Position numbers and translations under genes: made by a program. Below the pieces are notes generated by a model, which made no database searches, had not been told where the DNA came from, and saw nothing but the letters and a program-made list of their open reading frames with translations. This document shows positions 1-17,600 of a DNA stretch of 64,000 nt, one piece after another. How positions within the stretch are numbered: position 1 is the first letter of the stretch; every line of letters starts with the position of its first letter. The stretch is from positions 186,001 through 250,000 of the IMG/VR virus record IMGVR_UViG_3300027782_000025, one strand, 5' to 3'.

Positions 1-1
1 T

Positions 2-853
2 GGCAACCACGACATGTATCTCAGGCACAGCTGGAAATGTAATAGTTTAGATCCGATAAATGATAAATTAGTGGTTATTAACGATATAAAAGATCTTGTA
101 ATAGAAGGAAGACATTTCCATATCTTGCCGTATATGACCAAAGAAAGCACATATCGCAAAGTCTTAGAATTACTTTCACAAAAAGCTGATGCCGAAACTA
201 TACTTCTAACGCACATTGGTGTAAATGGCGCCACCTATAACACCTGCTTTACCCAAGCTTCGAATTCTTCTATAACATTTAACGACACACCATATAGGAA
301 GATCTTCACTGGGCATTATCACAATAGGCAATCGATAGGGGATAGGGTATATTATCCAGGGTCCCCAATACCTTTCAAACACGATGAAGGCGGTATTCCC
401 CATGGATTCTTGGTATTAGATACTGACACTTTAGAACAGAAGTTCGTTAACATCCAGAAAGCTGGTCAGAAGTTCTTCCCGACTGAAGCTCCACCACCGA
501 ATTTTTATACCATCATTCACACAGATGTTAATTCGACATCTGAAGAAGTAATTAAGAATAACCACATTCGTGTCGTGTTGGGTGAAACCATCGCGGAGAA
601 TGAGAAAGAATCGATTAGACTACTACTAGAAAACTACAATCCTAAAAGCATAAAGTTCATCACCCCGGTCGAAAAGATAACTGCTGGCAGAAAAGAAATA
701 AAAACTTACGGCATCAGCGATTACTTCGACAGATGGATTAAAAAAGATAAAAATTTTAAAGAGCTTGATGATAAACTGATATTAAAACTAAATCAGGAAA
801 TCATACAACTCGGCGATGAACAATACCTATCAGAATCCCAAGAAATAGAATAA
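2..853 (+). CDS. sbcD: Mre11/SbcD (T4 gp47-like) metallophosphoesterase nuclease, 5'-truncated by window
   Basis: In-frame codons upstream of ATG14 read G-N-H-D (phosphoesterase GNHD motif); also FTGHYH and YYPGSP motifs. The frame is open to the window start. Confidence 0.85.
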   Translation, partial: GNHDMYLRHSWKCNSLDPINDKLVVINDIKDLVIEGRHFHILPYMTKESTYRKVLELLSQKADAETILLTHIGVNGATYNTCFTQASNSSITFNDTPYRKIFTGHYHNRQSIGDRVYYPGSPIPFKHDEGGIPHGFLVLDTDTLEQKFVNIQKAGQKFFPTEAPPPNFYTIIHTDVNSTSEEVIKNNHIRVVLGETIAENEKESIRLLLENYNPKSIKFITPVEKITAGRKEIKTYGISDYFDRWIKKDKNFKELDDKLILKLNQEIIQLGDEQYLSESQEIE

Positions 854-869
854 GTGTATTATCACACAG

Positions 870-1310
870 TCAACAGTCTAGTGTTGACAACATAGCGACC
901 ACGTTTGTCGTAGGTTTTTTAAGCAGTTGGGAAACCAGATTCGGTCTTTTCAGGCAAGTTATCTCCATTGATCTGGTTTGTATAAATAAATGCCTGTAAC
1001 TCCCCAACCCGGCGATGAGCTATATCACTAGAGAAGGCGTGGCTTAACAGAGGACGGCATGTCTGCGAGCCATCAGTTGCCCCATATATAGTTCCTAACT
1101 CAAAGATCTGAGACACCAAACCTGATAGAGTGTACGGGTGACTGAACCTCACCGACGGCGGCAGATCCCATTATTATTGTTGACTATCGGCTAGCTCTAA
1201 ACCCCGCAAACCATAAGCGACTTGGTGAGCTGGACTGGTAGTGTTAAATAGTAAAACCGAGGCATTAGTAACATTTTGCACCTCTGGCCATTCTTTTGGT
1301 CTTTTTTTTT
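870..1310 (+). ncRNA. Candidate structured non-coding RNA (unassigned family)
   Basis: No credible ORF. Helices: 926-931/1003-1008, perfect 9-bp 932-940/971-979, crossing 951-956/991-996, 1061-1066/1161-1166, 1137-1141/1149-1153, plus a CTAGCTC/GAGCTGG stem. Ends at a hairpin plus T9. Confidence 0.4.
1286..1310 (+). terminator. Rho-independent terminator (putative)
   Basis: GGCCA-TTCTTT-TGGTC hairpin (one G-U pair) followed by 9 T. Confidence 0.55.
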
Positions 1311-1407
1311 AAAGACTTTTAGGGCGGGCGGGGAGGAGCTTGGTATATAATAAATGTGCCATTTAAAATAAAAATTAAAAGATAAAGGTCCACCGACAGG
1401 AAAACAA

Positions 1408-4400
1408 ATGGCAAAATTTACACCTCGTTTCCCTAGAAACGCTACTGACGGTCAAGAAGTTGCAGATAAGTATGGAAATGTTTGGAGATATTATTCTTCC
1501 ACTGACACCTGGGTATCAATCGGTTATCTTCAGCCTCCAATTATTGTCGATGAAAAGAATGATGGCTTTGTCTCCCCCGAAATTTATAAAAGAATACAAT
1601 ATTATAAAAACTTTAAAGAAGCTCTTAATCAAGCGCCCTTAAAGATATTGCCAGGTAGGGGAGCATACTATTATTACTTTAGATCTAATAATCGACTGAT
1701 TAAATTTAAGGCTGAATCTAAAAGCCAACTGCGTATAGAAGTCAATATGCAGCGGCTTTATCGTTTATTATATAATGAGAGATGCAAAGGCCCGACCGGT
1801 CAACGTGGACTAATTGGTGCGGCTGGAGTCGATGGTCTAGCAGCCCCCGCTGAACTCTCATTTAATCCAACATTTGACAATAATATAATGTCTTTTGCGG
1901 TCTACACCCCTCAGCCTTTAGAGGCTGGTGGAAAGATTTTTCTTCCGAATGGCCACGTACCAGATATAAGTGTTAGATTGGATGAGCTTGACCCCTCCTT
2001 CACTCCCTCTCTCCTCCCATCCTATGTCGAATTACCAATTTATCTGTTTACAATAAGCAATGAATACAAAGAATACATGAGGCTTCAAGCCGATATAAGA
2101 AATAAATGTGCGGCTGGTAACGGATTGTTCTATTTCTGTTTAAATGACGTTATTAAAAATCTTGACTTAGATTCGATAAATGCCCAAAGTGTGTTAGAAA
2201 TCAAGATTGACCCGACCGGCGCTGTTCCAGTTCGTTTTACAGGCGAGCTTTCTGCACTAATCGATGAGGGAGCATCAGCAGCGCTTATCGGTTATGATAA
2301 GGATTATCATATAGCCTATGGAAAAATAATCCTTAAGGTAGGTTCTTGGAACACTAATTATGCTGTAAAATCTAGACAATGTGGTCCAGACGGGGCTAGG
2401 GGTGACATTGGTTCTTCTAAATTAAGTATAAGCGAAGTGGTTATCGAGCCTGGTAGTACGGTCTTAGCTAAGAGGCCACTTATTGGTCTAAGATATGATA
2501 AAAGCTCATCTACTTTATTATCGTCATTTGGTGATCTTAGTATAGAGACGAATGTTGATAATATTTCTTTGGTTCCAGGATCTACAAATTTAGCTTTTGA
2601 AAGCCCAATTGATAGTGTTCTAGCGAGCGTTGAAACTACTGCTAATAGATATAAATCTCTAAGAATTCATGAGACCAGTATCGTTGGTTCTGAGACTCCT
2701 AAGACTAATTTTTTTGTCTGGCAGCCTCTACCAAACTGTGTTAGTAAGCATAATTATGAGAAGAATGTCTTTGATTGGGTGCCTTTAACTAGCAAGGAAC
2801 CTTGTGAAATTGGTGGTGTTACTTGGTATGGTGCTGATGGCCCTAAGAATGCTCAGTATCCATGGCAGATTTTAATACCTGCTTCTCCTGAGGTTGAAAA
2901 TTGCTGCCAGGAGCCTTTCTTCTATTGCCCTAATGTGCAGATGGGTGCTTGCAGCGATGTGGGTGGCGGTTCTGGGACTCCGGCCCCATCTACGCCCACT
3001 GCTTCACCAACACCAACAGCTTCACCGACGCCTACAGCTTCGCCCACTCCAACACCTACCCCAACACCAACACCTACCCCAACACCTACCCCAACACCTA
3101 CCCCAGCTGGGTCAGGTAGAGCCTTGTTTGGTTTTGGTATTACTACAGGAAATGTTTATGTCAGTTTAACCAACCATGTTTCGAATACCGGTGTTGTCGC
3201 ATCTGATACTACTGGTGTCGGTACCGCTAGAATGGGTCTGGCTGCTGCGGGTTATGGTGGTGATAAAGCTTTATTCGGATTTGGGATTTATAATGACCCT
3301 CTTGATGTTGTGGTCAGTACGACAAATCTTGTGTCGAATACTGGCGTGGTTGCGACCGACACAAATGGCGTTGGTACTCCAAGAATAGATCCGGCCGCTG
3401 CTGGTTATGGTACAGATAAGGCCATATTTGCATTCGGGAATACTGGAATTACTTTTACTTTTACCAGTTTAACTAATCTTGTATCTAATACTGGTGTTGT
3501 TGCGACCGATACGGCTAATGCTTCTAGTACTCCAAGAACTTCTGGCGCGGCAGCTGGTTATGGTGGTGATAAAGCTATTTTCGGATATGGGCTTTCGAAC
3601 ACAAATCCCTATGCATATATTAGTTTTACAAATCTTGTTTCTAACACCGGTGTTATGGCGTCTAATACCGCTGGCGTTGGTACTGCTAGGGCATATTTGG
3701 CGGCAGCAGGCTTCGGTGGTGATAAGGCCATATTTGGATATGGATCCACAAATAGCTCCACTTATGCTGAGACGAATATTGTTAATAATCTTGGTATAGT
3801 TTCAACTAATACTGTAATTGCTGGTTCTGTAAAGACGGAATCTTCCGCTACCATCTATGGTGGCAATAAAGCCGTATTTGGATATGGGTCCGGAAATGCT
3901 AGTAAGACTTATCTAAATCTCGCAAATTATGTTTCAAGCTTTGGCGTTGTTTCGGCGGATACAGCTATTGTTGGTACTGCTAGAAATAATTTAGCAGCGA
4001 CTAATTATGGTGGTAACCCAGCACCGACACCGACACCATGCTTAGACCTATTAGAAAAAGTCGGGCAATCACCATCAAACGTCGTATACCCACAAGACAA
4101 TGTCGTCTCACCAGACGGACGGACATTATATGTTTTAGGTGGTGGCCTTGGTAATACCCCCACCAAAGTGGCTATATTTTCAATAGACAAAAGCACTGGA
4201 CTTATAACCTTTGTAGAAGAAACAGCCGCTGGATACTCGCCTTATGGAATATGTGTTTCACCTGATTCAAAATATGTTTATATTTCTTCTATAACTGGTC
4301 CGCTCACAGATCCTACTTCAGTCTATGTGATCACAATGTATTCAAGAAATGCAGCCACAGGCAGTATAACATCGATAGGAACTGTTGGTCCAGTGGTTAC

Positions 4401-7400
4401 TAACGGTCAAATGGGTAAATTAATATTTTCTCCAAATGGGCTATTTGTCTATACTGCGACCTACAATACTATAATTTCTATTTATACTAGGAACGCTTCA
4501 ACAGGTGTTCTTGCCCCGCTTGGTTATGTCGTCGTAACCATACCTACATCTAACACTTTTTATATTCGTGGATTGTATATCTCGCCGGATGGCTTAAACT
4601 TATATGTTTCTCAAGATGAGACTTTTAATGCTGGCCGGCAGGTCATAGGTACTTCAATATCTAATTTTAGCATAAGCCAATCGACTGGACTGCTAACCTA
4701 TGTCGATAGAATAATAGGCAATGAAGTATTTTATAACGAAGGTATTGTTTCGCCGGACGGAAAAACCGTTTACACTTTAGGCACCAAAAATCCTTCCAAT
4801 ACCCTTGGAGCTGATGCTGTTACTATTTTTTCGAGATCTACTTCTACAGGTAGTCTTACACTCAGCGGTTCTATTGCTACAGCCGCAGTACCTACCGATA
4901 TTATAATATCTCCGGATGGTTCAAACGTCTATGTTAGCAGCGCAATTATAGTAGCTATAGGCTCCCTAGGCGCCCTTACGACATATCGTAGAAACATATC
5001 CACCGGAAGCTTGACATATTTAGGAGAAATACCTACTGGCGTCACGCCACGAGGTTTATCGATTTCGCCAGATGGTTCATATATCTATCAGGGAAATGCC
5101 TTAGATCCTTCTGTTTTTATATTTTTTAGGTGCGTCTCACTATCGCCGACACCGACTCCTACTCCGACACCCTCATATGTTACCGCTGGTCGAGCCGTAT
5201 TTGGATTTGGCGTTAGTGGCAGCCTTGCAACTTCGAGCGTTACTAATCTAGTTTCAAATACTGGTGTTGTCGCGACCGATTCTGCCGGTATTGGAACGGC
5301 CAGACATTATTTGGCTGCAGCTGGCTACGGCACAGATAAAGCTATATTTGGTTATGGGATTACATTTGGCGGCAGCATAAATACAAATTTAACGAATCTT
5401 GTTAGTAATATTGGAGTTATCGCGTCTGATACATCTGGCTTGGGAACCGCTAGAATGGGCTTAGCAGCAGCCGGCTATGGCACTGATAAAGCCATATTTG
5501 GCTATGGCTATACTACAGGTTATGTCGCTATTACTAACCTTGTTAATAACACTGGTCTCGTAGCGTCTGACACTGCCGGGGTCGGCTCGGTTAGGAATTT
5601 TTTAGCTGCTGCCGGTTATGGTGGTGATAAAGCAATTTTTGGCTTTGGGCAAAACAATACCTCAATATATTCGATGACTAACCTTGTTAGTAACACTGGA
5701 GTAGTCGCGTCAGACACAAATGGTGTTGGTAGCGGACGATCAGGCTCTTCAGCAGCCGGATATGGTAAAGATAAGGCGATTTTTGGCTTTGGTTTCTTTC
5801 AGAATGTTTATATCTCCTCGACTAATCTTATCAGTAGTATCGGTGTTGTTGCATCAGATACTTCCGGCATTGGTACCGCCAGAATGCTTAATGCAGCTGC
5901 CGGATATGGTGGTGATAAAGCGATTTTTGGATATGGAAGAACTAGTTCTACTGCAGCAGTAAGCATAACGAATCTTGTTAGTAGCACCGGCGTTGTCGCC
6001 ACTGATACAACTGGCATCGGCACTGAAAGATACGGGCTTGCCGCTGCTAGTGTTGGTGGTAATTCGTTGACACCTACACCTACACCTACACCAACACCAA
6101 CACCAACACCAACACCAACACCAACACCAATCAATCCATGCATAGTAACGAACTGGTCCGCTGTGCCGACGAAAGTCACGGGCGGCAGCTCTTACTATAT
6201 AACTTACGGTCAAGGTCGTTTCATAAATCTAATCACCACCGAATCAATTGAGATAGCAGATGGTGGAACTGTTTCTGTCCCCAGCTACTTGCAGACATCA
6301 ATCGATGGTACTAATTGGACAGATACTAAATTACCAAAAAATTATGTTTTTAATGGCTTTAATGCTTATCCTTACTTTTATTCTAAAATAGCAGTTAGCG
6401 ACAAAAGAATAATCTTTTGGGCAAACAATGATGTTTATACTCCTAACTACGATATTATTTATACAGATGATTTTGGCAGCACGTTTAATTCATATAAATT
6501 CGACGGAAAATATGGTTTCGAGTTTCCTCTGAGTATAGCTTACGGAAACAATAAATTCCTTCTAGTAACACAAGACATATACACCGCGATTGGAAGGAGT
6601 GTTAACTTTTATTTTTCTGATGATGGCTTAACTTTTGGCTCTGCCACTTATAGATTTTCTTTGCCCGGCCCTGATTGGAATGTAACGTTTACTAACGGCT
6701 TATTTTTTACATTTCCAGCAGGAACTATGACCGGCAGCCAAGTTTCGACAAAGGGGTATATGTCCGATGGCGGTCCCAATGCTTTTATCCCTTTTGATTT
6801 ACCTGTCGGAGCAGGCAATATTCGTAATCTAGTTTATGGTGCCGGAAGATATGTCTTGACTTCTGAAAAAGGCGTCTACTCTAGCCAAGGACCAAATCTT
6901 GGTCCTTGGGTTAAAGCTACATTGCCAACTACTATTACAACTGGTTATAGCGATAGCGCTTTCATTACTTTTGGATCTGGTACTTTCGTAATTATGCCTT
7001 TTAGAAAAAGCGTTCCTGATACACTTCAATATGCGCTTACTTCTCAAGATGGTATTAATTGGATCGTTACCGGTAGTCTTTTTACGTATCCTACTTCTCC
7101 TAACGCTCAACCAAGGGCCAACAATATAGCGTTTGGTTATACCTCACAAGATAAATCATCTTCTAAATTCATTATTAGTGCTATAACGACTACTCAAGGC
7201 ACGCTCGGCGCGCCATTAAATTATGGTAATGTTCTTGTCGCTCAATGTGTTACTACTCCAACACCTACACCAACTCCGACTGCTACGGCTTGTTCCTTTT
7301 TAACTTGGCCGCCATTTTTTGCTAATAGTAGTGCTGCTATGACTATTACTAGTATAAATACTGGTGCGGTTATGCAAGCTACCTTAGGAAATACTATAGT

Positions 7401-10400
7401 TGTAAAAGGTAATTTAAGTTATACACCACCACAAAACGACTACAGGGAATTTTACCAATACACTAGTAGTAGTGGCGCAATTATAATTGCTTCTCCATTT
7501 TCTGCCGGAGATAAAGTATTAATTAACGAAAATTCTGCATCACAAGGTACTAATGGTTACTATTTTATCTCTAAGATTATTAACGGTATCCACACGATCG
7601 TTTGTTCTCTTACACCAACACCTACTCCAACACCGACTCCGACACCAACTCCGACCACAGTTACTACTGCTTCAAACATTTGCGGATATCTCTGGGAAAG
7701 ATCAGATATCCCATCTGACAGGATAATTGTCGATGCTGCGACCTTCGGCCTTAATTATTACGCCATCACACACAATGATATCCTTGGTAATAGTTTACCA
7801 CTAGATGTAGGTTATAAGAGTAATTCCGGAAAGACATGGACTACGTTTACATTACCCTCGTTGTCAACAGGATACTGGAATAAGATAGCTTTTTTAGCTG
7901 GCGCAAGTACACCAGTGTTTGTGATCTACAGCACACCAGGCGTCGTCCGGCTATCGACCGACGATGGTAAAACTTGGGCCAAACCGTTTGACGCGGCTCA
8001 GGTAGGTATTGATCTGATTATCGTTTCTATTAGTTATAATACTTCTGCCAGCGTGCTAGTTGCTATTCATTCAGACGGCAAAGTGTATAAACATGGGATT
8101 CACTCTACAGATCCAACCCTGCTCACATTTACACTAATAAATCTACCTACGATCCCGAATAATGTCTGGCTAACAGTTAGTTTTAGTGATAAATTTTATC
8201 TGATTGGCAAGAACGCAGACGGCTCTTCATATGATACTTATTTAACATCAATAGATGGTGTTACTTGGGTCGTAGAGAAATTCCCACGTTCTGATAAATG
8301 GACAGGCATTGAGGGTCATAGCAATACGATTGTCGCTATTACGCTGGCCAATGGCGCGGCGGTTAAGACTGGTACACCATCGGCATGGCAGAATATTGTT
8401 TTACCAAATAATGTTTCTTCCTTTAGCTTTATTAGAAGTTCATCAACCGCCTCGTCTTTTTATCTTGGCGCTGCGTTTCTAGCAGCGGTAAAAGTCCCGA
8501 GTGGTGTAAACAATTCTGATATAGCCCATTCTACAGATGGTATAAATTGGTCGACCTCGACATTAACTTTTAATACTGCAGCCCCAGGCCTTAGCTTTAT
8601 AAATTTCTTTAAAGAAAACAACACCTTTTTAGTTATTTATAACGGCGGCGCCGATGGCGCTAAGGCTGCCGTATCATACTGTAACGAAATATCTTGTTTA
8701 ACATCTTGGACAGCGAGCAGAGCGCCAGACTTTACCAGCCCGCTTGGCGGTTTGCCGAATTACTCCGACTTGCTCTTTACATATGGTTCTAATTTTATGT
8801 TGCTTAATGCAACCACTTCTGACCTTAAGATATCTGATGATGGTATAACTTGGGCGTCTTTTAATGTCTATGGTGCTTCGACACCTGGGACCTCAGTTTG
8901 GAAAGATATTGCTGTTGGCCCGAATACGACATACTTGATACTTTCAGAGGAAAAAACAGTCGCTAAGTCTGTAGATGGTGGAAGAATTTGGCAAATATAC
9001 TCGACTTTACCGACACTCCCTAGTTCAGCAAGCAAAAACTGGCTTCAAGCATGCTACGGCGCTGGAAAATATGTGGCGTTAAGTTATTCTAACATAGGTG
9101 CATATTCTGTCGACAATGGTGCAACTTGGTCACAGATGACGTTGCCTGTATTCGCTGCATGGTCTGAATTGATTTACGCTAATGGCCAATTTGTGGCTAT
9201 AGCATCAAAAGAATTATCTAGTGGTGCTTTGGTAAATGCTGGATACGCGATGGTCTCTACTGATGGTATTAACTGGAGCATATTTAATCTGCCAGTTAAG
9301 ACAGATCCTTGGGTGGATATTGTTTATGGAAGCGATGTCTTTGTGGCTATACCTAGCGCACTAGATGCGAACTACGTCGCGGTTTCTTCTGATGCCAAAA
9401 AATGGACAAAGATATCGCTTCCAACACCAAGAATAACGCCATCCGTAAAATGGGTGCGGATATCATATGGGGCTGGCATCTTTCTTTTAACTTCTTCAGA
9501 TACTATACAGGCAGTATCTGCTGATGGGTTTAGCTGGTTTATTCGCAGTGCTGGTACTCTGTCCCCAATTAGTGATGCCATCGTAGCCTTTGGTAATAAT
9601 CGTTTTGTGGCGTTTTCATCGATACCTGAACGTGGTAATCCTGCTAACATTGCTATATCAATTTGCGATGCTACACCGCCCCCTTTCAGTAACCCTGACA
9701 TTAGCTGTTTTAAACAATGGCCAAGCAATGCTACTTCCGGCGATGCCTCTTATGTCAATACAGTGGTAACTGGCATGACATCTGGCGCAACGCAAATTAA
9801 TACGATTGTTAGCGAGCCATGCGTTTTAGGATTATATTTCCTTGATCCTAATAAAACCCAACAAAAACCCGTTTGGTATTATGGTCGATTTGCCTTTTTT
9901 AATAATGGAAGTATAACAGGTGTTAGCTCTAAATTTACGACTGCTAATACCCTTGGCAATCAGATGACATATGTTTATATAGATGAATCGACTTTCTTGT
10001 TTCGCACTGGTCTGCCTGATCCTAAACTAAATGATTATTTTAATAACGAAGACTTAACCGTTTACAATTTTAATGGTACTAATTCTATTTACCCAGGTGC
10101 TAAAATCGGCATCTCGGATGGGACATATAAGTATGTTGGATTAAGAGACTTAGGCGGCTTTACCTATTATGAAGCGACCTGTAAACCAAAGAATGTAATT
10201 GTCTATACTGTTTACTTAACTTATAAACATTCATTCTATGGTGGCCTATCCAATGGCCGTAACTTTATATTAAATGAAACTGTTAATATTGTAGGTGGTG
10301 TATCGAATTCCGCTGATTATGTAGTAACAGCCATAACACCTAGAAAAGGCTCGCCTGTCAATCCGCTCTGGGAAGGTGTAGAAGTGACTCTGGCGTGTCC

Positions 10401-13400
10401 TTTGATTACACCAACACCGACTCCGACTCCTACGCCGACTCCAACTCCGACCACATTTATAACTCCATCAATTTGCGGTAAATTACTTGCATGGGGATAT
10501 AATGGTCTAGAGTATCAGTTGGGGACGGGTTCAAAGGAATTGTTCGTTAGTGATCCTGATTTGGTGTTGATAGCAAATCCGATAACTTTTGATGGCACTA
10601 GTTATTTAACCACACCGATACCGGTTCCTGGTTCACCAGTAAGTTGTCTTTGCGCTCTAGATTATACGCAAGTCACTGAACCTAACGTACAGCTAGGAGA
10701 CAGAAAGACTGGGCCTTGCTCGCCAGGCTGTGATGGCTTATGCGAGTATATTGCTTGGGAAAACAGGGGGGTCTTATTTTGGAGGGCCTTGTCTTCTAGT
10801 TGTCAGATTACTCCAGTAAGTTCGCCGAATACACCGCCAGTGGCGACGCCGACACCACCGCCCGTTGCGACGCCGACACCGCCGCCAGTGGCGACACCAA
10901 CCCCAACACCGCCACCTTTAAATTGTACTCACGGTTGCAATGCTGGTCTTGGTTATCTCGCAATCACGGCGTTGGGTCCTAACAATACTAAGACAGTCAC
11001 TTTAACTGGCTCTAATGGCAAGAGTTTTAGTGCCGGTGAAACAATAATAATACAAGGTGTTGCGCCTGCTCCGGCGATTTGCTGGGATAATGTGAATGGC
11101 ACATATAAAATATTATCTGTCAATAATCGCCAAATTATTTTAGAATGTGTTTCTTTAGGATGCTTTAACGGATGGGCAAGTGGTAGTTTTAATGTTCCTG
11201 TATATGCTGGGATTACGGTGATCTCGTCTGGCGGCGCAGAAATAAGAGGTATAAAAACATCTGGAAGTACAGACTATTGGCTTGCTTTCGCTTGCAGTAC
11301 TATGTATTCCCCAATAACAGCGCCAATACTTACACCAAGCGATTCAAATGTTTATGTTGTAAATGATGTAATCCCACAAAACGTCGAATGTTTTGATAGA
11401 AATTCTACTAATGGTTCTTTACTTTCTAAAGGCATCATTGCTATCGGTCCCGCTACTGGAAATACTTCAAAGGGTATTTGCATCTCTGAAGATGGCACTA
11501 GTGTTTATGTCGGTACTAATTCATTAATAAAGATATACTCAAGAGATAAAACGACAGGCACACTAACAGATAATGGCACTATCTTATCGAATATAGCTGA
11601 CCAAATGTATTCGATCTGCATTTCTAAGGATGGCACCAGCGTTTATGCTGCTAGCCGATTAGGTAAACTTCACATGTTGAGTAGAAATACTACATCTGGA
11701 GCGCTTGCTGTATTGGGTGAAATTAGAACTTGGGGATTACAGGAGGGACTTTGCGTTTCAGAAGATGATAAGAGCGTTTATGTTATTAATTTGAATTCGC
11801 CAGCATTAGTTTCTATATATTCAAGAAATATTTCGACTGGCGTATTAACGGCGAATGGTCAAATAGGAGATTATAAACAGGGTGATAATTTTAATCCTCA
11901 TGGAATCTGTATTTCTAAAGATGGTAAAAATGTGTATGTGACGGCTTTTTATAAAGATTATGTTCTTTGGTATGATAGAGATGCTACCACTGGAGCTTTA
12001 GTGTTAAGGGGCACCGTTCCAACCCCCGCAAGCCAGCCTTGGGGGATATGTATATCTGCAGACGGTATAAGTGTTTATGTATCAAGTAATAGTGGCGCTG
12101 GTGTTTCGATATATAGCAGGAATGTTTCAACTGGTGCATTAGTACAAAATGGAAAGATTAACACACCACAAAGTTTAGCCTCATACGACATGTGCGTTTC
12201 AGCAGACGGGACTAGCGTATATGTGGTTTTTAACACTGGCTATGTAGGAGAGTACAGGAGAAATACTTCTACTGGCTTATTAACTTATGCTGGAGCTAAT
12301 AAAACAAATAGTACTAATCCACAGTCAGTCTGCATCTATCCTAAAACTTTTGGTCCAGCAACGACGCCGACTCCAACACCGACTCCAACACCAACACCAA
12401 CACCAACACCGACTCCAACACCAACACCAACACCAACACCAACACCAACACCAACACCAACACCAACACCAACACCAACACCAACACCAACACCAACACC
12501 AACACCAACACCAACACCCAAAAATGCTTGTACATTCATGACGATTTATTTTAATGAGTCTGGAAGTACAACCCAAGGCGGTCTAGCGCCACCCACTTGC
12601 GGAAGCACGATAACATATACCGTTGCTAACCCGACTGTCAATAATAATAATAAACTCGTTACAGCTTCAGTAAAGTTTTCGGATGTTCTTGAACCACACA
12701 CTCAAGGCGGCAGCGGTGAAAGATGCAAGCCACTCACTGCTATTATATATAATAATGGGCAATATTTTGGCACGATGTCATTCAATGACATTACTCTTGT
12801 ACCTGGGCATGCAGGTGCTAACGGTGCTTCTGTGTTTCAAGGCATATTAGGGATTTATTCGCTTTTCTTAGTTTGGACGTTTGAGTGTGCTCCCGCTGCT
12901 GCTCCAATAATAGTACCTCCTACACCTACTCCAACGCCGACACCAGCCCAAAGGGTTTTATGCAATATCTTGTATGGCGATACTTTTTCATATTTTGGTA
13001 TTAGTCATTTAGTGTCTGGTTCAAGCGGCATGCTGCTAATTAACCCTCCTAGTAGAGGTGGAGTTAGTTTCGACGGTTATTTATATGGTTCTGGTTATTG
13101 GGCTGGAAGGCCAAATACTTCGACACAGCTGAAAAGAATAGATGGAAAAGTAAATCCTGTAGTAGCTGCGCCTGGTCAGTGGAGATATGTTAATACATTC
13201 GGAAGCATGGCTTATGCAATCGATGCAAATAGCGATCTTTACACATGGGGTATCGATACATTTGGTGAATCGTGCTTGGATAGAAAGGGTGAGACAATAG
13301 CTGAGCCAACCAGAGTAACCGATGAATTTATGCCAAAACTTACAAAAATGAGTTATAATCAGATTGCCCCTGGTAACGGTTTTACAGCATTTTTAACTAA

Positions 13401-14664
13401 GCAAGGTGAGATTTACTATGTCGGCAAAAACAGTATGGAAGCCTACTTGGGCGTTAGTCTAAAATGGACATCTGACACTGCTTTCGAAAGAATAGATAAT
13501 AATGGCGTTGCCTATTTATATAAGCCAACATTAATAGCCAGTAGTCCAACATATAAACAGATTTATGCGTGTGATTCTGCACTGATCATTGTTGATGTTT
13601 CCGGCGGATTACATGTTATCGGTGAGAACAAATGTGGAGTGCTGGGGATAAACCAAAAGGAAGGTTATACCACTAACAAAGTAATCCCAATGTTAAATCC
13701 TATCCCAGTACAAACTTTAGGGTCAGGTGCTGGGCCTGGTGTGGAGGGAATAGGCTTAGGCGTTGGTGTCGGGTTTGGCGTCCGCACGTCAAGAACAAAT
13801 GCTATGGCTATCACACGCGACGGCGATTTATTGTTTTGGGGCGGTTTTGTCGGACAAAGCGGATTGCCTACAAACATATACAAGCCTACTAAATTGACTT
13901 TGCCAGAATCTGGCGTGATTGATTATCAGCCAAATACTTCTGGATGCCTAGTAGTATTTAAGAGCGGCAATGTGTACGCTTATGGTTATAGTATTATCGA
14001 TAATAACAATGCTCCTGATACATTCTCTTCAGATTTTGTCCAAGTTGGATTTGGGTCGATTAATGGTGCTTTGGTCCTAGCCCATGGCTCCCCAGAACGA
14101 AACGGATATGTCTTAGTAAAGGATTTTGTAAAACCGCAATTGCCGGTTGGCTTGGGCCTGTGTATGACTATATTCGATAAAATCGCAAATGCCGATACAA
14201 TAACTGACGCTAATGGTATTCAATTCTATATTGGCGACACTATAGAAGTAAAACTAGACGTCACAACTAACCCCTACAATGGCAAGTATACGATCACCAA
14301 CATTGAAAAATTTACGGTTGGTACTAAGATAACCAAACAGATGAGATTAACTTGCTTATCTGGTAATTGTTTGGCTGGCGGGTTCCCTGGGGTGCTAACG
14401 GTTCCGGCTGTGCTTCCAGATCTAAGAAGCCTAACATCTACCAGCGGCGCTTCAATTATTCCAGCTCCGGCCGGAACATCGCCTGTATACACTATTACTT
14501 TCAATCCTAGCTGCGGAACTAGCCCGACACCAACACCGACAACACCAACGCCGACACCGGCTACACCAACGCCGACACCGGCTACACCAACGCCGACACC
14601 GGCTACACCAACGCCAACGCCGACTACGTCTAAATTAAAAGTACTATACACAGCGTGGAAATAA
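1408..14664 (+). CDS. Giant modular virion fibre/adhesin protein (4418 aa)
   Basis: N-terminal FPRNATDGQ...W.Y...W motif and short Gly-X-Y stretches. Two clusters of six [10 protein letters not shown](F/Y)G Kelch-like repeats, two lactonase-like propellers (SPDG/SEDG repeats), Asp-box (S.DG..W) domains and RCC1-like segments, separated by Pro-Thr linkers. Confidence 0.75.
2977..3105 (+). repeat. Pro/Thr linker tandem repeat
   Basis: Degenerate ACNCCN hexamer array encoding [10 protein letters not shown]...(PT)n. Confidence 0.9.
6070..6129 (+). repeat. Pro/Thr linker tandem repeat
   Basis: ACACCT/ACACCA hexamer array encoding (TP)10. Confidence 0.9.
12364..12519 (+). repeat. (CCAACA)n microsatellite encoding a (TP)n linker
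   Basis: 17 perfect CCAACA copies at 12415-12516 within a longer degenerate array. Confidence 0.95.
14521..14625 (+). repeat. 21-bp tandem repeat encoding (TPTPTPA)n
   Basis: ACACCAACGCCGACACCGGCT repeated three times near the 3' end of the 4418-aa gene. Confidence 0.85.
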
Positions 14665-14676
14665 AAAAGGAAAACC

Positions 14677-17600
14677 ATGAGGCTTACTGATAATATAAAA
14701 GCTAAAATAGAGGAACTCTATAATCTTACACCAGAAGATATTCACGGTGTTAGCCTAGGATATAAGCATAAAAGCGGCGCTAACACTGGCGAGATAGGCA
14801 TAGTATTTAGCGTTCTTAAAAAACTAAGTAGAAGTGAGTTAAAACCATCAGATATCTTGCCATCTACTATTACTGTAGACGGCGTTGATATTATTACTGA
14901 TGTTATAGAGGCTAAGCCAATTAAGTTAGTCTCTTGCTATCCTAACATGAGCTCTACTCCGCTGACTTCTTATATTGGCACCGATACAAATATCACACGA
15001 TTGCAAGGGCATGATACAGCCCTTCTAACACCGATGAAAGGTGGTCAAGAATTAGTACAATTTCCTACTAATTGGACAGCTGTTAATAACAACGGCCAAA
15101 CGAGCTATAATTTCGATGTGGGCACATTATGCATGTTTTGTATCGATAGTTTAGATTTTAGGGTGGTTGGTCTTACGAATAGTCACGTTGCAATTGACAG
15201 AAGAAATATAGCCACAGACAGAGATATAGTATTAGAAACGCAAGATCCTTATAACATTTACGAAGACATGACGTGGGTTTATGATGGAAAGAAGCATCCG
15301 CCCAGTATGGCTGCCTTTAATACTTTTAATAACCTTAATCTGGTCGGTAGATTAAAGAGGTACATCCCTGTGACTTCAGGCATAAATTATGTAGACGCAG
15401 CTCTCTACATTCCTAACGATTCTTATATTGATGTGGCTTCATCTTATAACACCTGGCACCCTATTGGCAGCGATAATTACGCATTTAAACCAATACCTCC
15501 TTTCGCTTCAACCAGCGAGATTGACAGTCTATTGGCAAATGCTAGCACCACACCAATATACAGCACCGGCCGTACAACCGGGCCAAAAGGGTTTAGTCAG
15601 ACTGCATCATGTAAGCTCATAATTACGGGCATTGGTGCTACGGTTACGGTCAACAATAATGCAAATTCAGCTAATAGCTGGGGTGACCTCATAGTATTTA
15701 AAAATGCTGATTCATCTTATTGGCCTATAGCTGGTGGAGATTCTGGATCTCCAATGATAGCTGTTATCGGCGGTGTCGAAAAAATAATAGGAATAGCTTT
15801 TGCTGGTAGTCCAGACACGGCATACGCTTGCAGAATCGATAGAGTTGCGCAAGAGCTGAAGATCGAATCGTATAAAAGCTTTCACACGACTACCGTTGCA
15901 GTACCTGATACTTTTACTATAGACTACACCGATCCGAGAGCCAAGCAAGCGACCATAACAGTGAATGGTGCGGTATATTATCAAGCTGGCTTTACTTTGG
16001 TTCAAGTTGCTACACCAACACCGACAGCTACTCCGACAGCTACTCCGACAGCTACTCCGACAGCTACTCCGACAGCTACTCCGACAGCTACTCCGACAGC
16101 TACACCCACAGCTACACCCACAGCAACACCGACAGCTACACCGACAGCTACACCCACAGCTACACCCACAGCAACACCGACACCCACAAATTGTTTTTTA
16201 TCTTGGCCTCAAGCTACCTCTTATTCATTTGATTATATGACTATTACTAGTATTAATTCTGGTATGGTTTTAAAACCAATCTTTGGAACTTCTAATATAG
16301 TAATAAACAGCAATAGAGAATTTTATCAAAAGGACTTTACTAGCGGTAAGCCGGTGACTTGCACCCCATTTTCTGTCGGAGATAAAGTTCTAATAGCTCA
16401 GAACTCTACACCGATGCGGGGCTATGATGGCTATTATTATATTTCTAAGATCACAAGCGGTATCCACTCTCTTGTATGCACTCTTGCAGAAGTGTCAACA
16501 CTGTGCGTAGGCGAATTGACAGGCCCCTGTGAAACGGAAAGAAACGGCACTGTTTATTACTTAGCTGTATCTCCCGATGGCTTAAATGTATATGCAACAA
16601 TATTTCAAAATCCAACGATATTAGTTTATAACAGGTCTAAGACTACAGGCGCATTAACATTAAACAGTACCATAACTATGGTTGCTGCGCTCCCAGCAGA
16701 TATAATCGTATCTCCAGATGGTTTATATGTATATGTCACTAACGGTAGTAACGGCCTTACAAAAAGCGGACCATATATATCAATTTATAGGAGAGACAAA
16801 GCTACGGGTGCACTGACAAGCGCTGGTACCCAATACACAGGCATAGATTGGGATTTTACTCTTGGCATTGCCATTTCTCCAGATAATTTAAATGCATATA
16901 CTACAAATTATGGGTCTGGTACAGTATCGATTTATAATAGAAACATAATCACAGGAGCGTTGACAAGTGCCGGCACCATAGATGCAGCAGTTAAGCTCGC
17001 TGTTGGTATATCAGGCAGTCAACCACACGATGTGATCGTTTCTCCTGATAATTTGAATGTATATGTGACTAATACCATGCCGCCAACAAATGGTTGTGTA
17101 TTATCGATCTATAAAAGAAACACAACTACTGGCGCACTAACAAGTGCTGGCACTGTACCAACTGGTAGTAACGCTAAGCGCATGTGTATTTCTCCCGACG
17201 GTAAAAACGTATATGTGCTTCATGACGGCAGTCCCGGCAAATTAACTATTTTTAATAGAAACACGACCACGGGGGCGTTAACAAATGCCGGCGACATAGA
17301 TACAGGAAATTGGCCTTGGGGTGTTAATATCTCTCCAGACGGCTTAAATGTGTATGTGACAAAAAACGGTCCGAACGAAATGTTCATCTATAGTAGAAAT
17401 AAGGTCACAGGCACCTTGATTAAAACAGGCACCAGCCTTATAAGTCTGTTTAATGCGCCTACTGATGTGGTGGTTTCACCAGATGGCTTAAATGTATACT
17501 CAGGGCTATTCAGTGGGTCTTTTTCTAGCGCGATTCCCGGGGGCTATGGCGGATCAGTTTCAGTCTTTAATAGATGTTTACCAACGCCTACACCAACGCC

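What the first reader, a model, noticed from the sequence alone, without database searches (positions are those of the whole stretch)
870..1310. Candidate ~400-nt structured ncRNA with a pseudoknot upstream of the giant fibre operon
Seen: the largest non-coding gap in a very dense window, visibly GC-richer than its flanks. It has an enclosing helix GTTGGG(926-931)/CCCAAC(1003-1008), a perfect 9-bp helix AAACCAGAT(932-940)/ATCTGGTTT(971-979), and a crossing helix CAGGCA(951-956)/TGCCTG(991-996), i.e. an H-type pseudoknot. Further stems lie at 1061-1071/1157-1166 and 1137-1153, plus CTAGCTC/GAGCTGG. It opens with a GTCAACA/TGTTGAC hairpin and ends in a terminator. I could not match it to tRNA, tmRNA, RNase P or group I/II intron cores. 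Inference: an unassigned phage structured RNA or a replication-origin element.
Basis: partly seen in the sequence, partly recalled or inferred. Interest (0 to 1): 0.65.

Follow-up and report, generated by a model that had tools for sequence, protein, structure and literature searches.

The report
New structured RNA in huge phage
The 554-base gap between a repair-nuclease gene and a 4,418-residue giant gene of a huge lake phage holds a conserved, transcribed, many-helix RNA of about 390-450 bases that matches no known RNA family and may gate transcription into the giant structural operon.

Summary
Window 854-1407 is the largest gene-free gap of the window and is GC-richer than its flanks.

Seven distinct homologues, from two clades of the same huge-phage lineage, keep the fold while the helices change sequence:
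- 70 consensus pairs, 99% of cells paired, 12 pairs with compensatory changes.
- Controls with the 3' partner slid by 1-3 columns gave 0-1 compensatory pairs and about 40% pairing.
- Loops and junctions are nearly invariant.
- No ORF in the gap is conserved.

Rfam 15 and ARAGORN find nothing in either clade. Contigs from four metatranscriptome runs lie only on 644-1378 of the first 3 kb.

The pseudoknot (951-956/991-996) is geometrically plausible and invariant, so covariation cannot test it.

A long-range helix (1034-1044/1286-1296) closes the central and 3' domains and overlaps the terminator hairpin (1286-1301 plus U9). My best reading is a cis-acting attenuator between the replication module and the giant structural operon (about 0.4). 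The rivals are a stand-alone stable RNA (about 0.3) and an origin primer RNA (about 0.1).

This is a new, narrowly distributed RNA family of unproven function.

The parts
2..853 (+). 3' part of the SbcD-type nuclease gene (full gene 362 aa in L001:412-1500). It is the upstream neighbour in every homologue.
   Evidence: ORF. Relatives carry Pfam Metallophos and the JGI name 'SbcCD nuclease subunit'. RNA-library contigs run from 644, 770 and 835 into the RNA.
869..888 (+). Hairpin H1: GTCAACA, 6-nt loop, TGTTGAC.
   Evidence: Read from the sequence. In the L013/L078 clade a different hairpin (CTGGTT/AACCAG) sits at the same place.
895..911 (+). Hairpin H2: GCGAC, 7-nt loop, GTCGT. The T-run after it is present only in the window's clade.
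   Evidence: The stem and the GTTT part of the loop are conserved. The T-run is absent in the L013 clade, so it is not a conserved terminator.
923..1013 (+). 5' domain. P1 is 923-924/1012-1013 plus 926-931/1003-1008. P2 is 934-941/970-977 plus 943-944/965-966. P2 carries a nearly invariant 28-nt loop.
   Evidence: P2 has 4 compensatory pairs (934/977, 935/976, 937/974, 940/971). P1 has U-A to U-G at 928/1006. Pair 925/1010 reads A.C, then A-U, then G.U across the sequences. Column-shuffle z = -3.1.
951..996 (+). Candidate H-type pseudoknot: CAGGCA 951-956 (in the P2 loop) with UGCCUG 991-996. Loops are 6, 8 and 13 nt; the 13-nt loop is A-rich.
   Evidence: The pairing is complementary and invariant in all 7 sequences. 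The geometry is feasible (inference). There is no covariation, so it is untested.
1014..1033 (+). Variable linker.
   Evidence: 35% identity between the clades.
1034..1044 (+). 5' strand of the long-range helix P3. It pairs with 1286-1296.
   Evidence: Pairs 1034/1296 and 1035/1295 are compensatory. Pair 1036/1294 alternates G.U and G-C. Pairs 1037/1293 and 1040-1042/1288-1290 are invariant.
1052..1173 (+). Central domain. Closing stems are 1056-1057/1168-1169, 1061-1066/1161-1166, 1069-1071/1157-1159 and 1073-1074/1154-1155. Hairpins are P6 1099-1112, P7 1113-1133 and P8 1137-1153.
   Evidence: Model R2 has 29 pairs and 100% of cells paired. Three pairs are compensatory (1056/1169, 1139/1151, 1140/1150). 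Slid controls gave 28-39% pairing. Between-clade identity is 77-78% over 1034-1172, above the nuclease CDS at 73%.
1171..1254 (+). 3' domain: a long irregular hairpin. P10 is 1171-1178/1247-1254 and P9 is 1183-1197/1227-1242. The apical-loop block CUCUAAACCCCGCAA is invariant.
   Evidence: The same architecture appears in all clades at about 52% identity. Compensatory pairs are 1191/1233, 1193/1231 (this one also inside the window's clade), 1194/1230 and 1172/1253. The within-clade changes at 1174/1251, 1187/1238, 1188/1237 and 1193/1231, and L003's change at 1189, keep pairing; L012's changes at 1189 and 1236 give A.C. Column-shuffle z = -5.4 on + against -2.1 on -.
1257..1287 (+). Hairpin P11: CCGAGG paired with CCUC(U)GG. 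Its 3' arm overlaps terminator T1.
   Evidence: Per-clade folds. The other clade has GUAUC/GAUAC (L013) or GGUACCAC/GUGUGGUAC (L078) at the same place.
1286..1310 (+). T1, an intrinsic-terminator-like hairpin GGCCA/UGGUC followed by U9. Its 5' arm and loop form the 3' strand of P3.
   Evidence: L067 has G1287A, which turns the G.U of T1 into A-U. T1 is clear only in the window's clade.
1299..1320 (+). T2, an A/U-rich palindromic hairpin GUCUUU/AAAGAC followed by UUUU. It overlaps T1.
   Evidence: Kept in all clades, with its outer pairs changed: GUC/GAC, CCA/UGG, CA/UG.
1322..1345 (+). G-box GGGCGGGCGGGG. Its 3' half can form a hairpin, CGGG/CUUG here and CGGG/CCCG in the other clade.
   Evidence: Invariant across clades and unique in the 274.6-kb genome. 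Hairpin seen.
1365..1380 (+). Invariant AT block AAAATAAAAATTAAAA, in the leader of the giant gene.
1408..14664 (+). The 4,418-aa giant gene. It is the downstream neighbour in every homologue.
   Evidence: Genes of 4,003-4,007 aa sit at the same place in L014 and L015.

Best explanation
**What is shown**
The gap encodes a real, lineage-specific RNA with several structured domains. Hairpins H1 and H2 start at 869 and the core runs 923-1312. The whole gap may serve as a leader.

Its parts are:
- a 5' domain (P1, P2 and a possible pseudoknot);
- a central three-hairpin domain closed by a long stem;
- a long 3' hairpin domain;
- a long-range helix, P3, that ties 1034-1044 to 1286-1296.

The + strand is the more likely strand, but this is not settled.

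**What is inferred**
The RNA is made as the tail of the nuclease transcript. It acts in cis as a transcription attenuator between the replication/recombination module and the giant structural operon. When the RNA is folded, P3 and P11 hold the 5' arm of terminator T1, so the polymerase reads on through the G-box leader into the giant gene. When P3 is not formed, T1 and its U9 tract stop transcription.

The signal that sets the fold (a protein, a small molecule or folding kinetics) is unknown.
For: **Structure**
- 12 compensatory pairs and 3 one-sided changes among 70 pairs, with 99% of cells paired. Slid controls gave 0-1 compensatory pairs.
- The tool's own count on the central domain gave 100% paired, against 28-39% when slid.
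- Column-shuffle z-scores were -2.5 to -5.4.
- Loops are more conserved than helices, and the core is more conserved than the neighbouring CDS.

**Non-coding:** no ORF is shared by the clades.

**Strand**
- G.U pairs 941/970 and 1061/1166 are conserved in all sequences.
- The T-runs follow the hairpins on the + strand.
- The flanking genes are on the same strand.

**Transcription:** contigs from 4 RNA runs in 3 studies lie only on 644-1378 of window 1-3000. Some bridge the nuclease 3' end into the RNA, and one bridges T1/T2 into the leader.

**Cis role**
- P3 has two compensatory pairs, and it shares 1286-1296 with T1.
- H2 is not a conserved terminator.
- The G-box and AT block downstream are invariant yet unique in the genome, so they are not a general promoter motif.
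- The G-box hairpin keeps pairing through U-to-C changes on the + strand.
Against: **Thin sampling**
- There are only 7 distinct sequences in effectively two clades, so the independent events are few.
- The structure was derived from the same alignment it is scored on.

**Weak points in the switch model**
- T1 is clear only in the window's clade. In L013 and L078 the local fold prefers other pairings.
- A folded element of about 370 nt is larger than any known riboswitch (my own knowledge).
- No ligand or protein partner is known.
- A promoter for the giant gene between 1320 and 1407 cannot be excluded; a -10-like TATAAT lies at 1345.

**Limits of the RNA data:** Logan contigs show no ends, strand or expression levels, and the runs were chosen because they hold this stretch.

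**Strand:** the 3' hairpin folds better on the - strand in the L013/L078 clade.
Confidence: 0.4

Rival explanations
1. A stand-alone, trans-acting stable non-coding RNA. It would be an 'ornate' phage RNA in the manner of GOLLD or ROOL, ended by T1/T2. Its function would be unrelated to the neighbouring genes, for example a scaffold, a decoy or an RNA-only assembly.
For: - The size, the number of helices and the nearly invariant loops resemble large stand-alone RNAs.
- RNA-library contigs cover the element but not the flanking genes, as expected of a stable, abundant RNA.
- A terminator-like end is present.
Against: - No promoter conserved in both clades is seen between 854 and 922.
- Contigs bridge from the nuclease gene and across T1/T2.
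- The conserved helices overlap the terminator.
- The invariant, locus-specific blocks continue up to the ATG.
Confidence: 0.3
2. A replication-origin element. A structured transcript (or a folded single DNA strand) would end in a G-rich box next to an AT-rich stretch and prime DNA synthesis through an R-loop. Known parallels are ColE1 RNA II, the phage T4 origins and mitochondrial CSB II.
For: - Gene orientation flips from - to + at 185.75 kb, 1.1 kb upstream, where the intergenic spacer is only about 24 nt.
- The cumulative GC skew is lowest at 186-204 kb.
- Replication genes flank the site: a helicase, the nuclease, and DNA polymerase III alpha in relatives.
- A unique G-box and an AT block follow the folded part.
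Against: - The skew minimum is broad and can be explained by gene orientation alone.
- There are no iterons or other repeats; every motif is single-copy.
- Relatives at 33-50% nuclease identity have no such element next to the nuclease gene.
Confidence: 0.1
3. A structured 3' untranslated region of the nuclease mRNA. It would serve only as a stabiliser and transcriptional insulator, ending early transcription before the late genes, with no switch.
For: - RNA contigs are continuous from the nuclease 3' end.
- H1, H2, T1 and T2 are hairpins of the protective or terminating type.
Against: A stabiliser or insulator does not need about 11 helices with invariant loops conserved above the level of the adjacent CDS.
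Confidence: 0.1
4. Not a functional RNA: either chance complementarity in a decaying or protein-coding stretch, or a double-stranded protein-binding region.
For: - The single-sequence folding energy is not significant.
- The 3' hairpin shows no consistent strand preference.
Against: - Compensatory changes occur in at least 7 helices, and controls give 0-1.
- No ORF is conserved.
- Pfam finds nothing in the 77-aa ORF.
- The gap length is kept at 540-557 nt in four lineages.
Confidence: 0.04

Closest known systems
GOLLD, ROOL and OLE: large 'ornate' bacterial and phage RNAs of unknown function (PMC5737381; bioRxiv 10.1101/2024.12.08.627333)
   Same: - A large, many-helix non-coding RNA carried by a phage.
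- Found in lake metagenomes.
- Conserved loops and covarying stems.
- No known function.
   Different: - It does not match their Rfam models.
- It is shorter, about 390-450 nt.
- It is not next to tRNA genes: the only tRNA is 176 kb away.
- It is restricted to one phage lineage.
- Its 3' helices overlap a terminator just upstream of a gene.
Transcription-attenuating leaders: riboswitches and T-box leaders with competing terminator and antiterminator
   Same: - A conserved folded domain on the same strand as the next gene and directly upstream of it.
- Its closing helix shares bases with a hairpin plus U-tract terminator.
   Different: - It is two to ten times larger than known aptamers (my own knowledge).
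- It matches no Rfam riboswitch or T-box family.
- It sits between two genes rather than just after a promoter.
- No ligand is known.
- The terminator is poorly conserved in the second clade.
Processive antitermination RNAs: put of phage HK022 and EAR of Bacillus (my own knowledge)
   Same: A cis-acting RNA at the head of a very long operon would let the polymerase traverse it. The setting is also a phage early-to-late boundary.
   Different: - put has two short stem-loops (about 70 nt) and EAR is about 120 nt.
- Rfam, which as far as I recall holds EAR, gave no match.
- No evidence here bears on processivity.
Origin primer transcripts: ColE1 RNA II, phage T4 R-loop origins and mitochondrial LSP/CSB II (my own knowledge)
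   Same: - A structured transcript of several hundred nt.
- It is followed by a G-rich block and an AT-rich stretch.
- It lies beside replication genes and near a strand switch and skew minimum.
   Different: - There is no sequence similarity.
- No RNase H site, iteron or R-loop evidence is available.
- The skew signal is confounded by gene orientation.

Membership tests
Any Rfam 15 family (including tmRNA, RNase P RNA, 6S, SRP, group I and II introns, riboswitches, T-box, GOLLD, ROOL, OLE, HEARO) | A match to the family's covariance model at or near its gathering score. | tested here: not met
   There were no hits at gathering score over the 64-kb window. At E up to 10 on 700-1500 and on L013:4050-4700 the only hits were implausible ones at 11-19 bits, against gathering scores of 39-55.
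tmRNA / tRNA-like RNA | A tRNA-like acceptor and T arm, plus a tag reading frame. | tested here: not met
   ARAGORN found nothing in the window or in L003, L013 and L078.
GOLLD/ROOL-type ornate phage RNA | Adjacency to tRNA genes in a phage or prophage, and length above 500 nt. | tested here: not met
   The only tRNA of the 274.6-kb record is at 10.5 kb, about 176 kb away. The folded core is about 390 nt.
GOLLD/ROOL-type ornate phage RNA | Forms RNA-only multimeric assemblies. | not testable with these tools
   This needs cryo-EM or native gels.
Terminator/antiterminator leader (riboswitch-like attenuator) | A conserved folded domain upstream of the regulated gene and on the same strand. | tested here: met
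Terminator/antiterminator leader (riboswitch-like attenuator) | An intrinsic terminator directly downstream of the domain. | tested here: inconclusive
   T1 (1286-1301 plus U9) is clear in the window's clade. In the L013/L078 clade only the weak T2 and a doubtful T1 equivalent are present.
Terminator/antiterminator leader (riboswitch-like attenuator) | Mutually exclusive pairing between a helix of the domain and the terminator. | tested here: met
   The P3 3' strand (1286-1296) and the P11 3' arm (1281-1287) share bases with the T1 5' arm and loop. P3 has 2 compensatory pairs. This is shown by sequence analysis only.
Terminator/antiterminator leader (riboswitch-like attenuator) | Read-through that depends on a signal. 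| not testable with these tools
   This needs transcription assays or Term-seq.
Origin primer RNA (ColE1 RNA II / R-loop origin type) | A location at the replication start: a skew switch, and an AT-rich unwinding element after a G-rich block. | tested here: inconclusive
   The orientation switch is at 185.75 kb and the skew minimum at 186-204 kb. The G-box and AT block are present and unique. All of this can be explained without an origin.
Diversity-generating retroelement template RNA | A near-identical second copy (the variable repeat) in a target gene, and a reverse transcriptase nearby. | tested here: not met
   The gap profile and model R2 each find one copy in the genome. All motifs are single-copy.

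The most novel reading that the evidence does not exclude
The element is a giant RNA switch. An aptamer-like fold of about 370 nt, with a pseudoknot and a long-range closing helix, would decide whether transcription coming from the replication module passes a terminator into the giant structural operon of a huge phage. That operon runs for more than 20 kb (1408 to at least 23843, and possibly much further). The RNA would therefore set the early-to-late transition in response to a still unknown signal. It would be the largest known cis-acting attenuator and a new way of timing phage late genes.
Probability: 0.25. Interest if true: 0.85.

Novelty: new variant of a known kind. Interest (0 to 1): 0.62.

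Why it matters
- **A tractable new RNA.** Large structured RNAs without a known job are rare and are mostly found by chance. This one comes with a defined fold, covariation support, evidence of transcription in lakes and a fixed genomic setting, so it can be studied experimentally.
- **A possible timing mechanism.** If it gates read-through into the giant operon, it would show an RNA-based control of the early-to-late switch in huge phages, whose gene regulation is almost unknown.
- **Other possible roles.** If it is a stand-alone RNA, it adds a new family to the small set of ornate phage RNAs. If it is an origin, it would be the first origin mapped in this phage group.

Tried and rejected
1. 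**Second copy in a small phage (L037).** An IMG/VR contig ends with 47 nt identical to window 1133-1180. Five other contigs of that phage carry ordinary coding sequence at that place. The end is therefore chimeric and is neither a second copy nor an attachment site.
2. **Host origin.** A scan of one genome per prokaryote species with a 19-base core gave 8 chance hits and no homologue.
3. **More distant homologues.** Nothing was found with the nhmmer profile or with model R2. The places searched were:
   - the sequence after the nuclease gene in phages at 33-50% nuclease identity;
   - the 762-bp gap of L084;
   - the 919-bp gap of L050.
4. **Further scans.** Four more core patterns in IMG/VR found only the three known contigs.
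5. **Protein searches with the giant protein's N-terminus.**
   - The region search gave nothing.
   - The 400-aa search gave 4 hits, and none added a new clade.
6. **Contigs without DNA.** The lineages at 77-79% nuclease identity (P0004-P0006) are listed without DNA.
7. **The 77-aa minus-strand ORF.** It is not conserved and has no Pfam match.
8. **Pairing of the G-box with the RNA's C-rich loops.** It is no better than with shuffled sequence.
9. **A recurring promoter motif shared with 1340-1350.** None was found.
10. **Model R1.** It was built on an unsuitable automatic structure and was not used.
11. **Lost calls.** Searches gave no result (no answer and a time-out) and were repeated in smaller form.
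12. **Breaks of the RNA contigs at 1164-1188.** Strain differences at 1186-1193 and low depth can explain them, so I do not read them as a processing site.

Full report
**Setting.** The window is bases 186001-250000 of a 274.6-kb IMG/VR phage record that is rated about 70% complete. Bases 2-853 are the end of a 362-aa SbcD-type nuclease gene. Bases 1408-14664 encode a 4,418-aa protein, and long + strand genes follow it. The 554 bases between them (854-1407) are the largest gene-free stretch of the window. From about 1000 to 1250 they are GC-richer (0.45-0.52) than the flanks (0.28-0.39).

**The observation.** On its own, the stretch does not fold better than shuffled sequence: z = -1.19 on + and +0.32 on -. 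The sequence alone therefore proves nothing. Rfam 15 finds nothing at gathering score in the whole window. At E up to 10 it gives only implausible hits at 11-19 bits, both here and in the second clade. ARAGORN finds no tRNA or tmRNA.

**Homologues.** I collected 7 distinct versions of the gap using searches with the nuclease protein, conserved DNA cores and look-ups of encoding contigs.
- The window type also occurs on a 275-kb JGI contig.
- L003, L012 and L067 are 92-96% identical to the window over the gap.
- L013, L016 and L078 come from phages whose nuclease is about 80% identical in protein.

Phages at 33-50% nuclease identity have other genes after the nuclease and no detectable copy. 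The genome holds a single copy. A scan of one genome per prokaryote species found none.

**The fold.** The alignments show the classic pattern of a functional RNA: stems change and loops do not.
- P2 (934-941/970-977) has four pairs changed on both sides.
- P8 (1137-1141/1149-1153) has two.
- P9 (1191-1197/1227-1233) has three, one of them (A-U to G-C at 1193/1231) inside the window's own clade.
- The closing stem of the central domain has one, P10 has one, and the long-range helix P3 (1034-1037/1293-1296) has two.

Hairpin H1 is replaced by an unrelated hairpin at the same spot.

Over the consensus structure:
- 70 pairs are 99% paired in 7 sequences;
- 12 are compensatory, 3 changed on one side, and 4 have a broken cell;
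- sliding the 3' partners by 1-3 columns gives 0-1 compensatory pairs and about 40% pairing.

The tool's own count on the central domain gives 100% pairing, against 28-39% when slid. Consensus folding energies beat column-shuffled alignments in each domain, with z = -3.1, -2.5 and -5.4 on the + strand.

Between the clades, the 5' domain is 74% identical and the central domain 77-78%. That is at or above the nuclease coding sequence (73%) and well above the start of the giant gene (60%). The 3' hairpin keeps its shape at about 52% identity.

The limits must be stated. The sequences fall into effectively two clades. The structure was inferred from the alignment it is scored on. A formal covariation test needs many more sequences.

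**Not coding.** The 77-aa minus-strand ORF (93 aa in L003 and L012) is broken in the L013/L078 clade. No other ORF is shared, and Pfam finds nothing.

**Pseudoknot.** CAGGCA 951-956 in the P2 loop and UGCCUG 991-996 are complementary and invariant in all sequences. The loop lengths (6, 8 and 13 nt, the last A-rich) suit an H-type pseudoknot; that is an inference. Because nothing varies, it stays untested. I estimate a chance match at about 1 in 10.

**Strand and transcription.** Several points favour the + strand:
- G.U pairs 941/970 and 1061/1166 are conserved in every sequence;
- T-runs follow the hairpins on the + strand;
- the flanking genes lie on the + strand.

One point goes the other way. 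The 3' hairpin folds better on the - strand in the L013/L078 clade. I therefore rate the + strand as likely, not certain.

Contigs from four metatranscriptome runs in three studies lie on 644-1188, 770-1038, 835-1048, 936-1166, 1015-1164 and 1184-1378. They lie nowhere else in window 1-3000. This fits an RNA far more abundant than the neighbouring mRNAs. It fits co-transcription with the end of the nuclease gene. It also shows that some molecules cross the terminators. However, contigs show no ends, strand or expression levels, and the runs were selected because they hold this stretch.

**How it may work.** P3 closes the central and 3' domains, and its 3' strand (1286-1296) is also the 5' arm and loop of terminator T1 (1286-1301 plus U9). 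P11 overlaps T1 as well. H2 is not a conserved terminator, and no promoter conserved in both clades lies upstream of P1. Downstream of T1 and T2, the G-box (1322-1333) and an AT block (1365-1380) are invariant yet unique in the genome, so they are not a general promoter motif. The G-box hairpin keeps its pairs through U-to-C changes.

I therefore favour, at about 0.4, a cis-acting attenuator. The folded RNA prevents T1 and lets the polymerase coming from the nuclease gene enter the giant operon. The unfolded RNA lets T1 stop it.

Three weaknesses remain. T1 is clear only in the window's clade. The element is far larger than known switches. A private promoter for the giant gene cannot be excluded.

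**Rivals.**
- A stand-alone stable RNA (about 0.3) fits the size, the invariant loops and the contig pattern.
- An origin primer RNA (about 0.1) is kept alive by three things: the gene-orientation switch 1.1 kb upstream, a broad GC-skew minimum at 186-204 kb, and the G-box and AT block.
- A plain stabilising 3' UTR (about 0.1) explains too little of the conservation.
- A non-functional reading (about 0.04) is contradicted by the covariation.

**Dead ends.** A small-phage contig that seemed to carry part of the RNA (L037) has a chimeric end. Pairing of the G-box with the RNA's C-rich loops is no better than with shuffled sequence.

**Novelty.** The element belongs to no described family. It resembles the orphan large phage RNAs in kind and attenuating leaders in layout, but it meets the membership tests of neither. 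It is narrowly distributed, and its function is unproven.

Noticed in passing
L037:9735-9781 (IMGVR_UViG_3300042339_000019): A 9.8-kb contig of an unrelated small tailed phage ends with 47 nt identical to window 1133-1180. Five other contigs of that phage (L091-L095) have coding sequence there instead, so the contig end is chimeric.
   Followed up: yes
G000 185.7-204 kb (window about -250 to 18000): Long ORFs lie mostly on the - strand from 83 to 185.7 kb and mostly on the + strand afterwards. The switch falls in a spacer of about 24 nt between the helicase and nuclease genes. The cumulative GC skew has a broad minimum at 186-204 kb.
   Followed up: partly
L088:176-1267 and L089:215-1306: In close relatives (92% aa identity) the first 363 residues of the giant protein are a separate ORF. 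The next ORF starts 20 nt later. The giant gene is therefore split, or broken, in some variants.
   Followed up: no
L084:1863-2624 and L050:5971-6889: More distant relatives have their own long non-coding gaps. L084 has a 762-nt gap ending in a strong terminator, before a 34%-identical homologue of the giant protein's N-terminus. L050 has a 919-nt gap before a 1,907-aa gene. Neither is similar to this RNA by nhmmer or model R2; they may be analogous elements.
   Followed up: partly
window 1322-1333 and 1365-1380: The G-box GGGCGGGCGGGG and the AT block AAAATAAAAATTAAAA are invariant across clades and occur once in the 274.6-kb genome.
   Followed up: partly
window 1357-1363 with 1405-1411: In the window's clade, GCCAUUU can pair with AAAUGGC, which holds the giant gene's start codon. 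In the other clade the 5' arm of hairpin T2 (CCAUUUU or CAUUUU) is complementary to the same start region. This could be start-codon masking or chance in AU-rich sequence.
   Followed up: no
window 1164-1188: Three RNA-library contigs end at 1164, 1166 and 1188, and one begins at 1184. Strain differences at 1186-1193 and low depth can explain this, but a processing site is not excluded.
   Followed up: partly
G000 1-20000: The first 20 kb of the record are GC-richer (0.45-0.51, against 0.40 overall). They have many gaps of 200-750 nt and hold the only tRNA (Met, 10528-10599, - strand).
   Followed up: no
window 1408-14664: The giant protein is built of repeated blocks joined by long Pro-Thr linkers, as seen in the translation. 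Pfam finds nothing in its first 500 residues.
   Followed up: no
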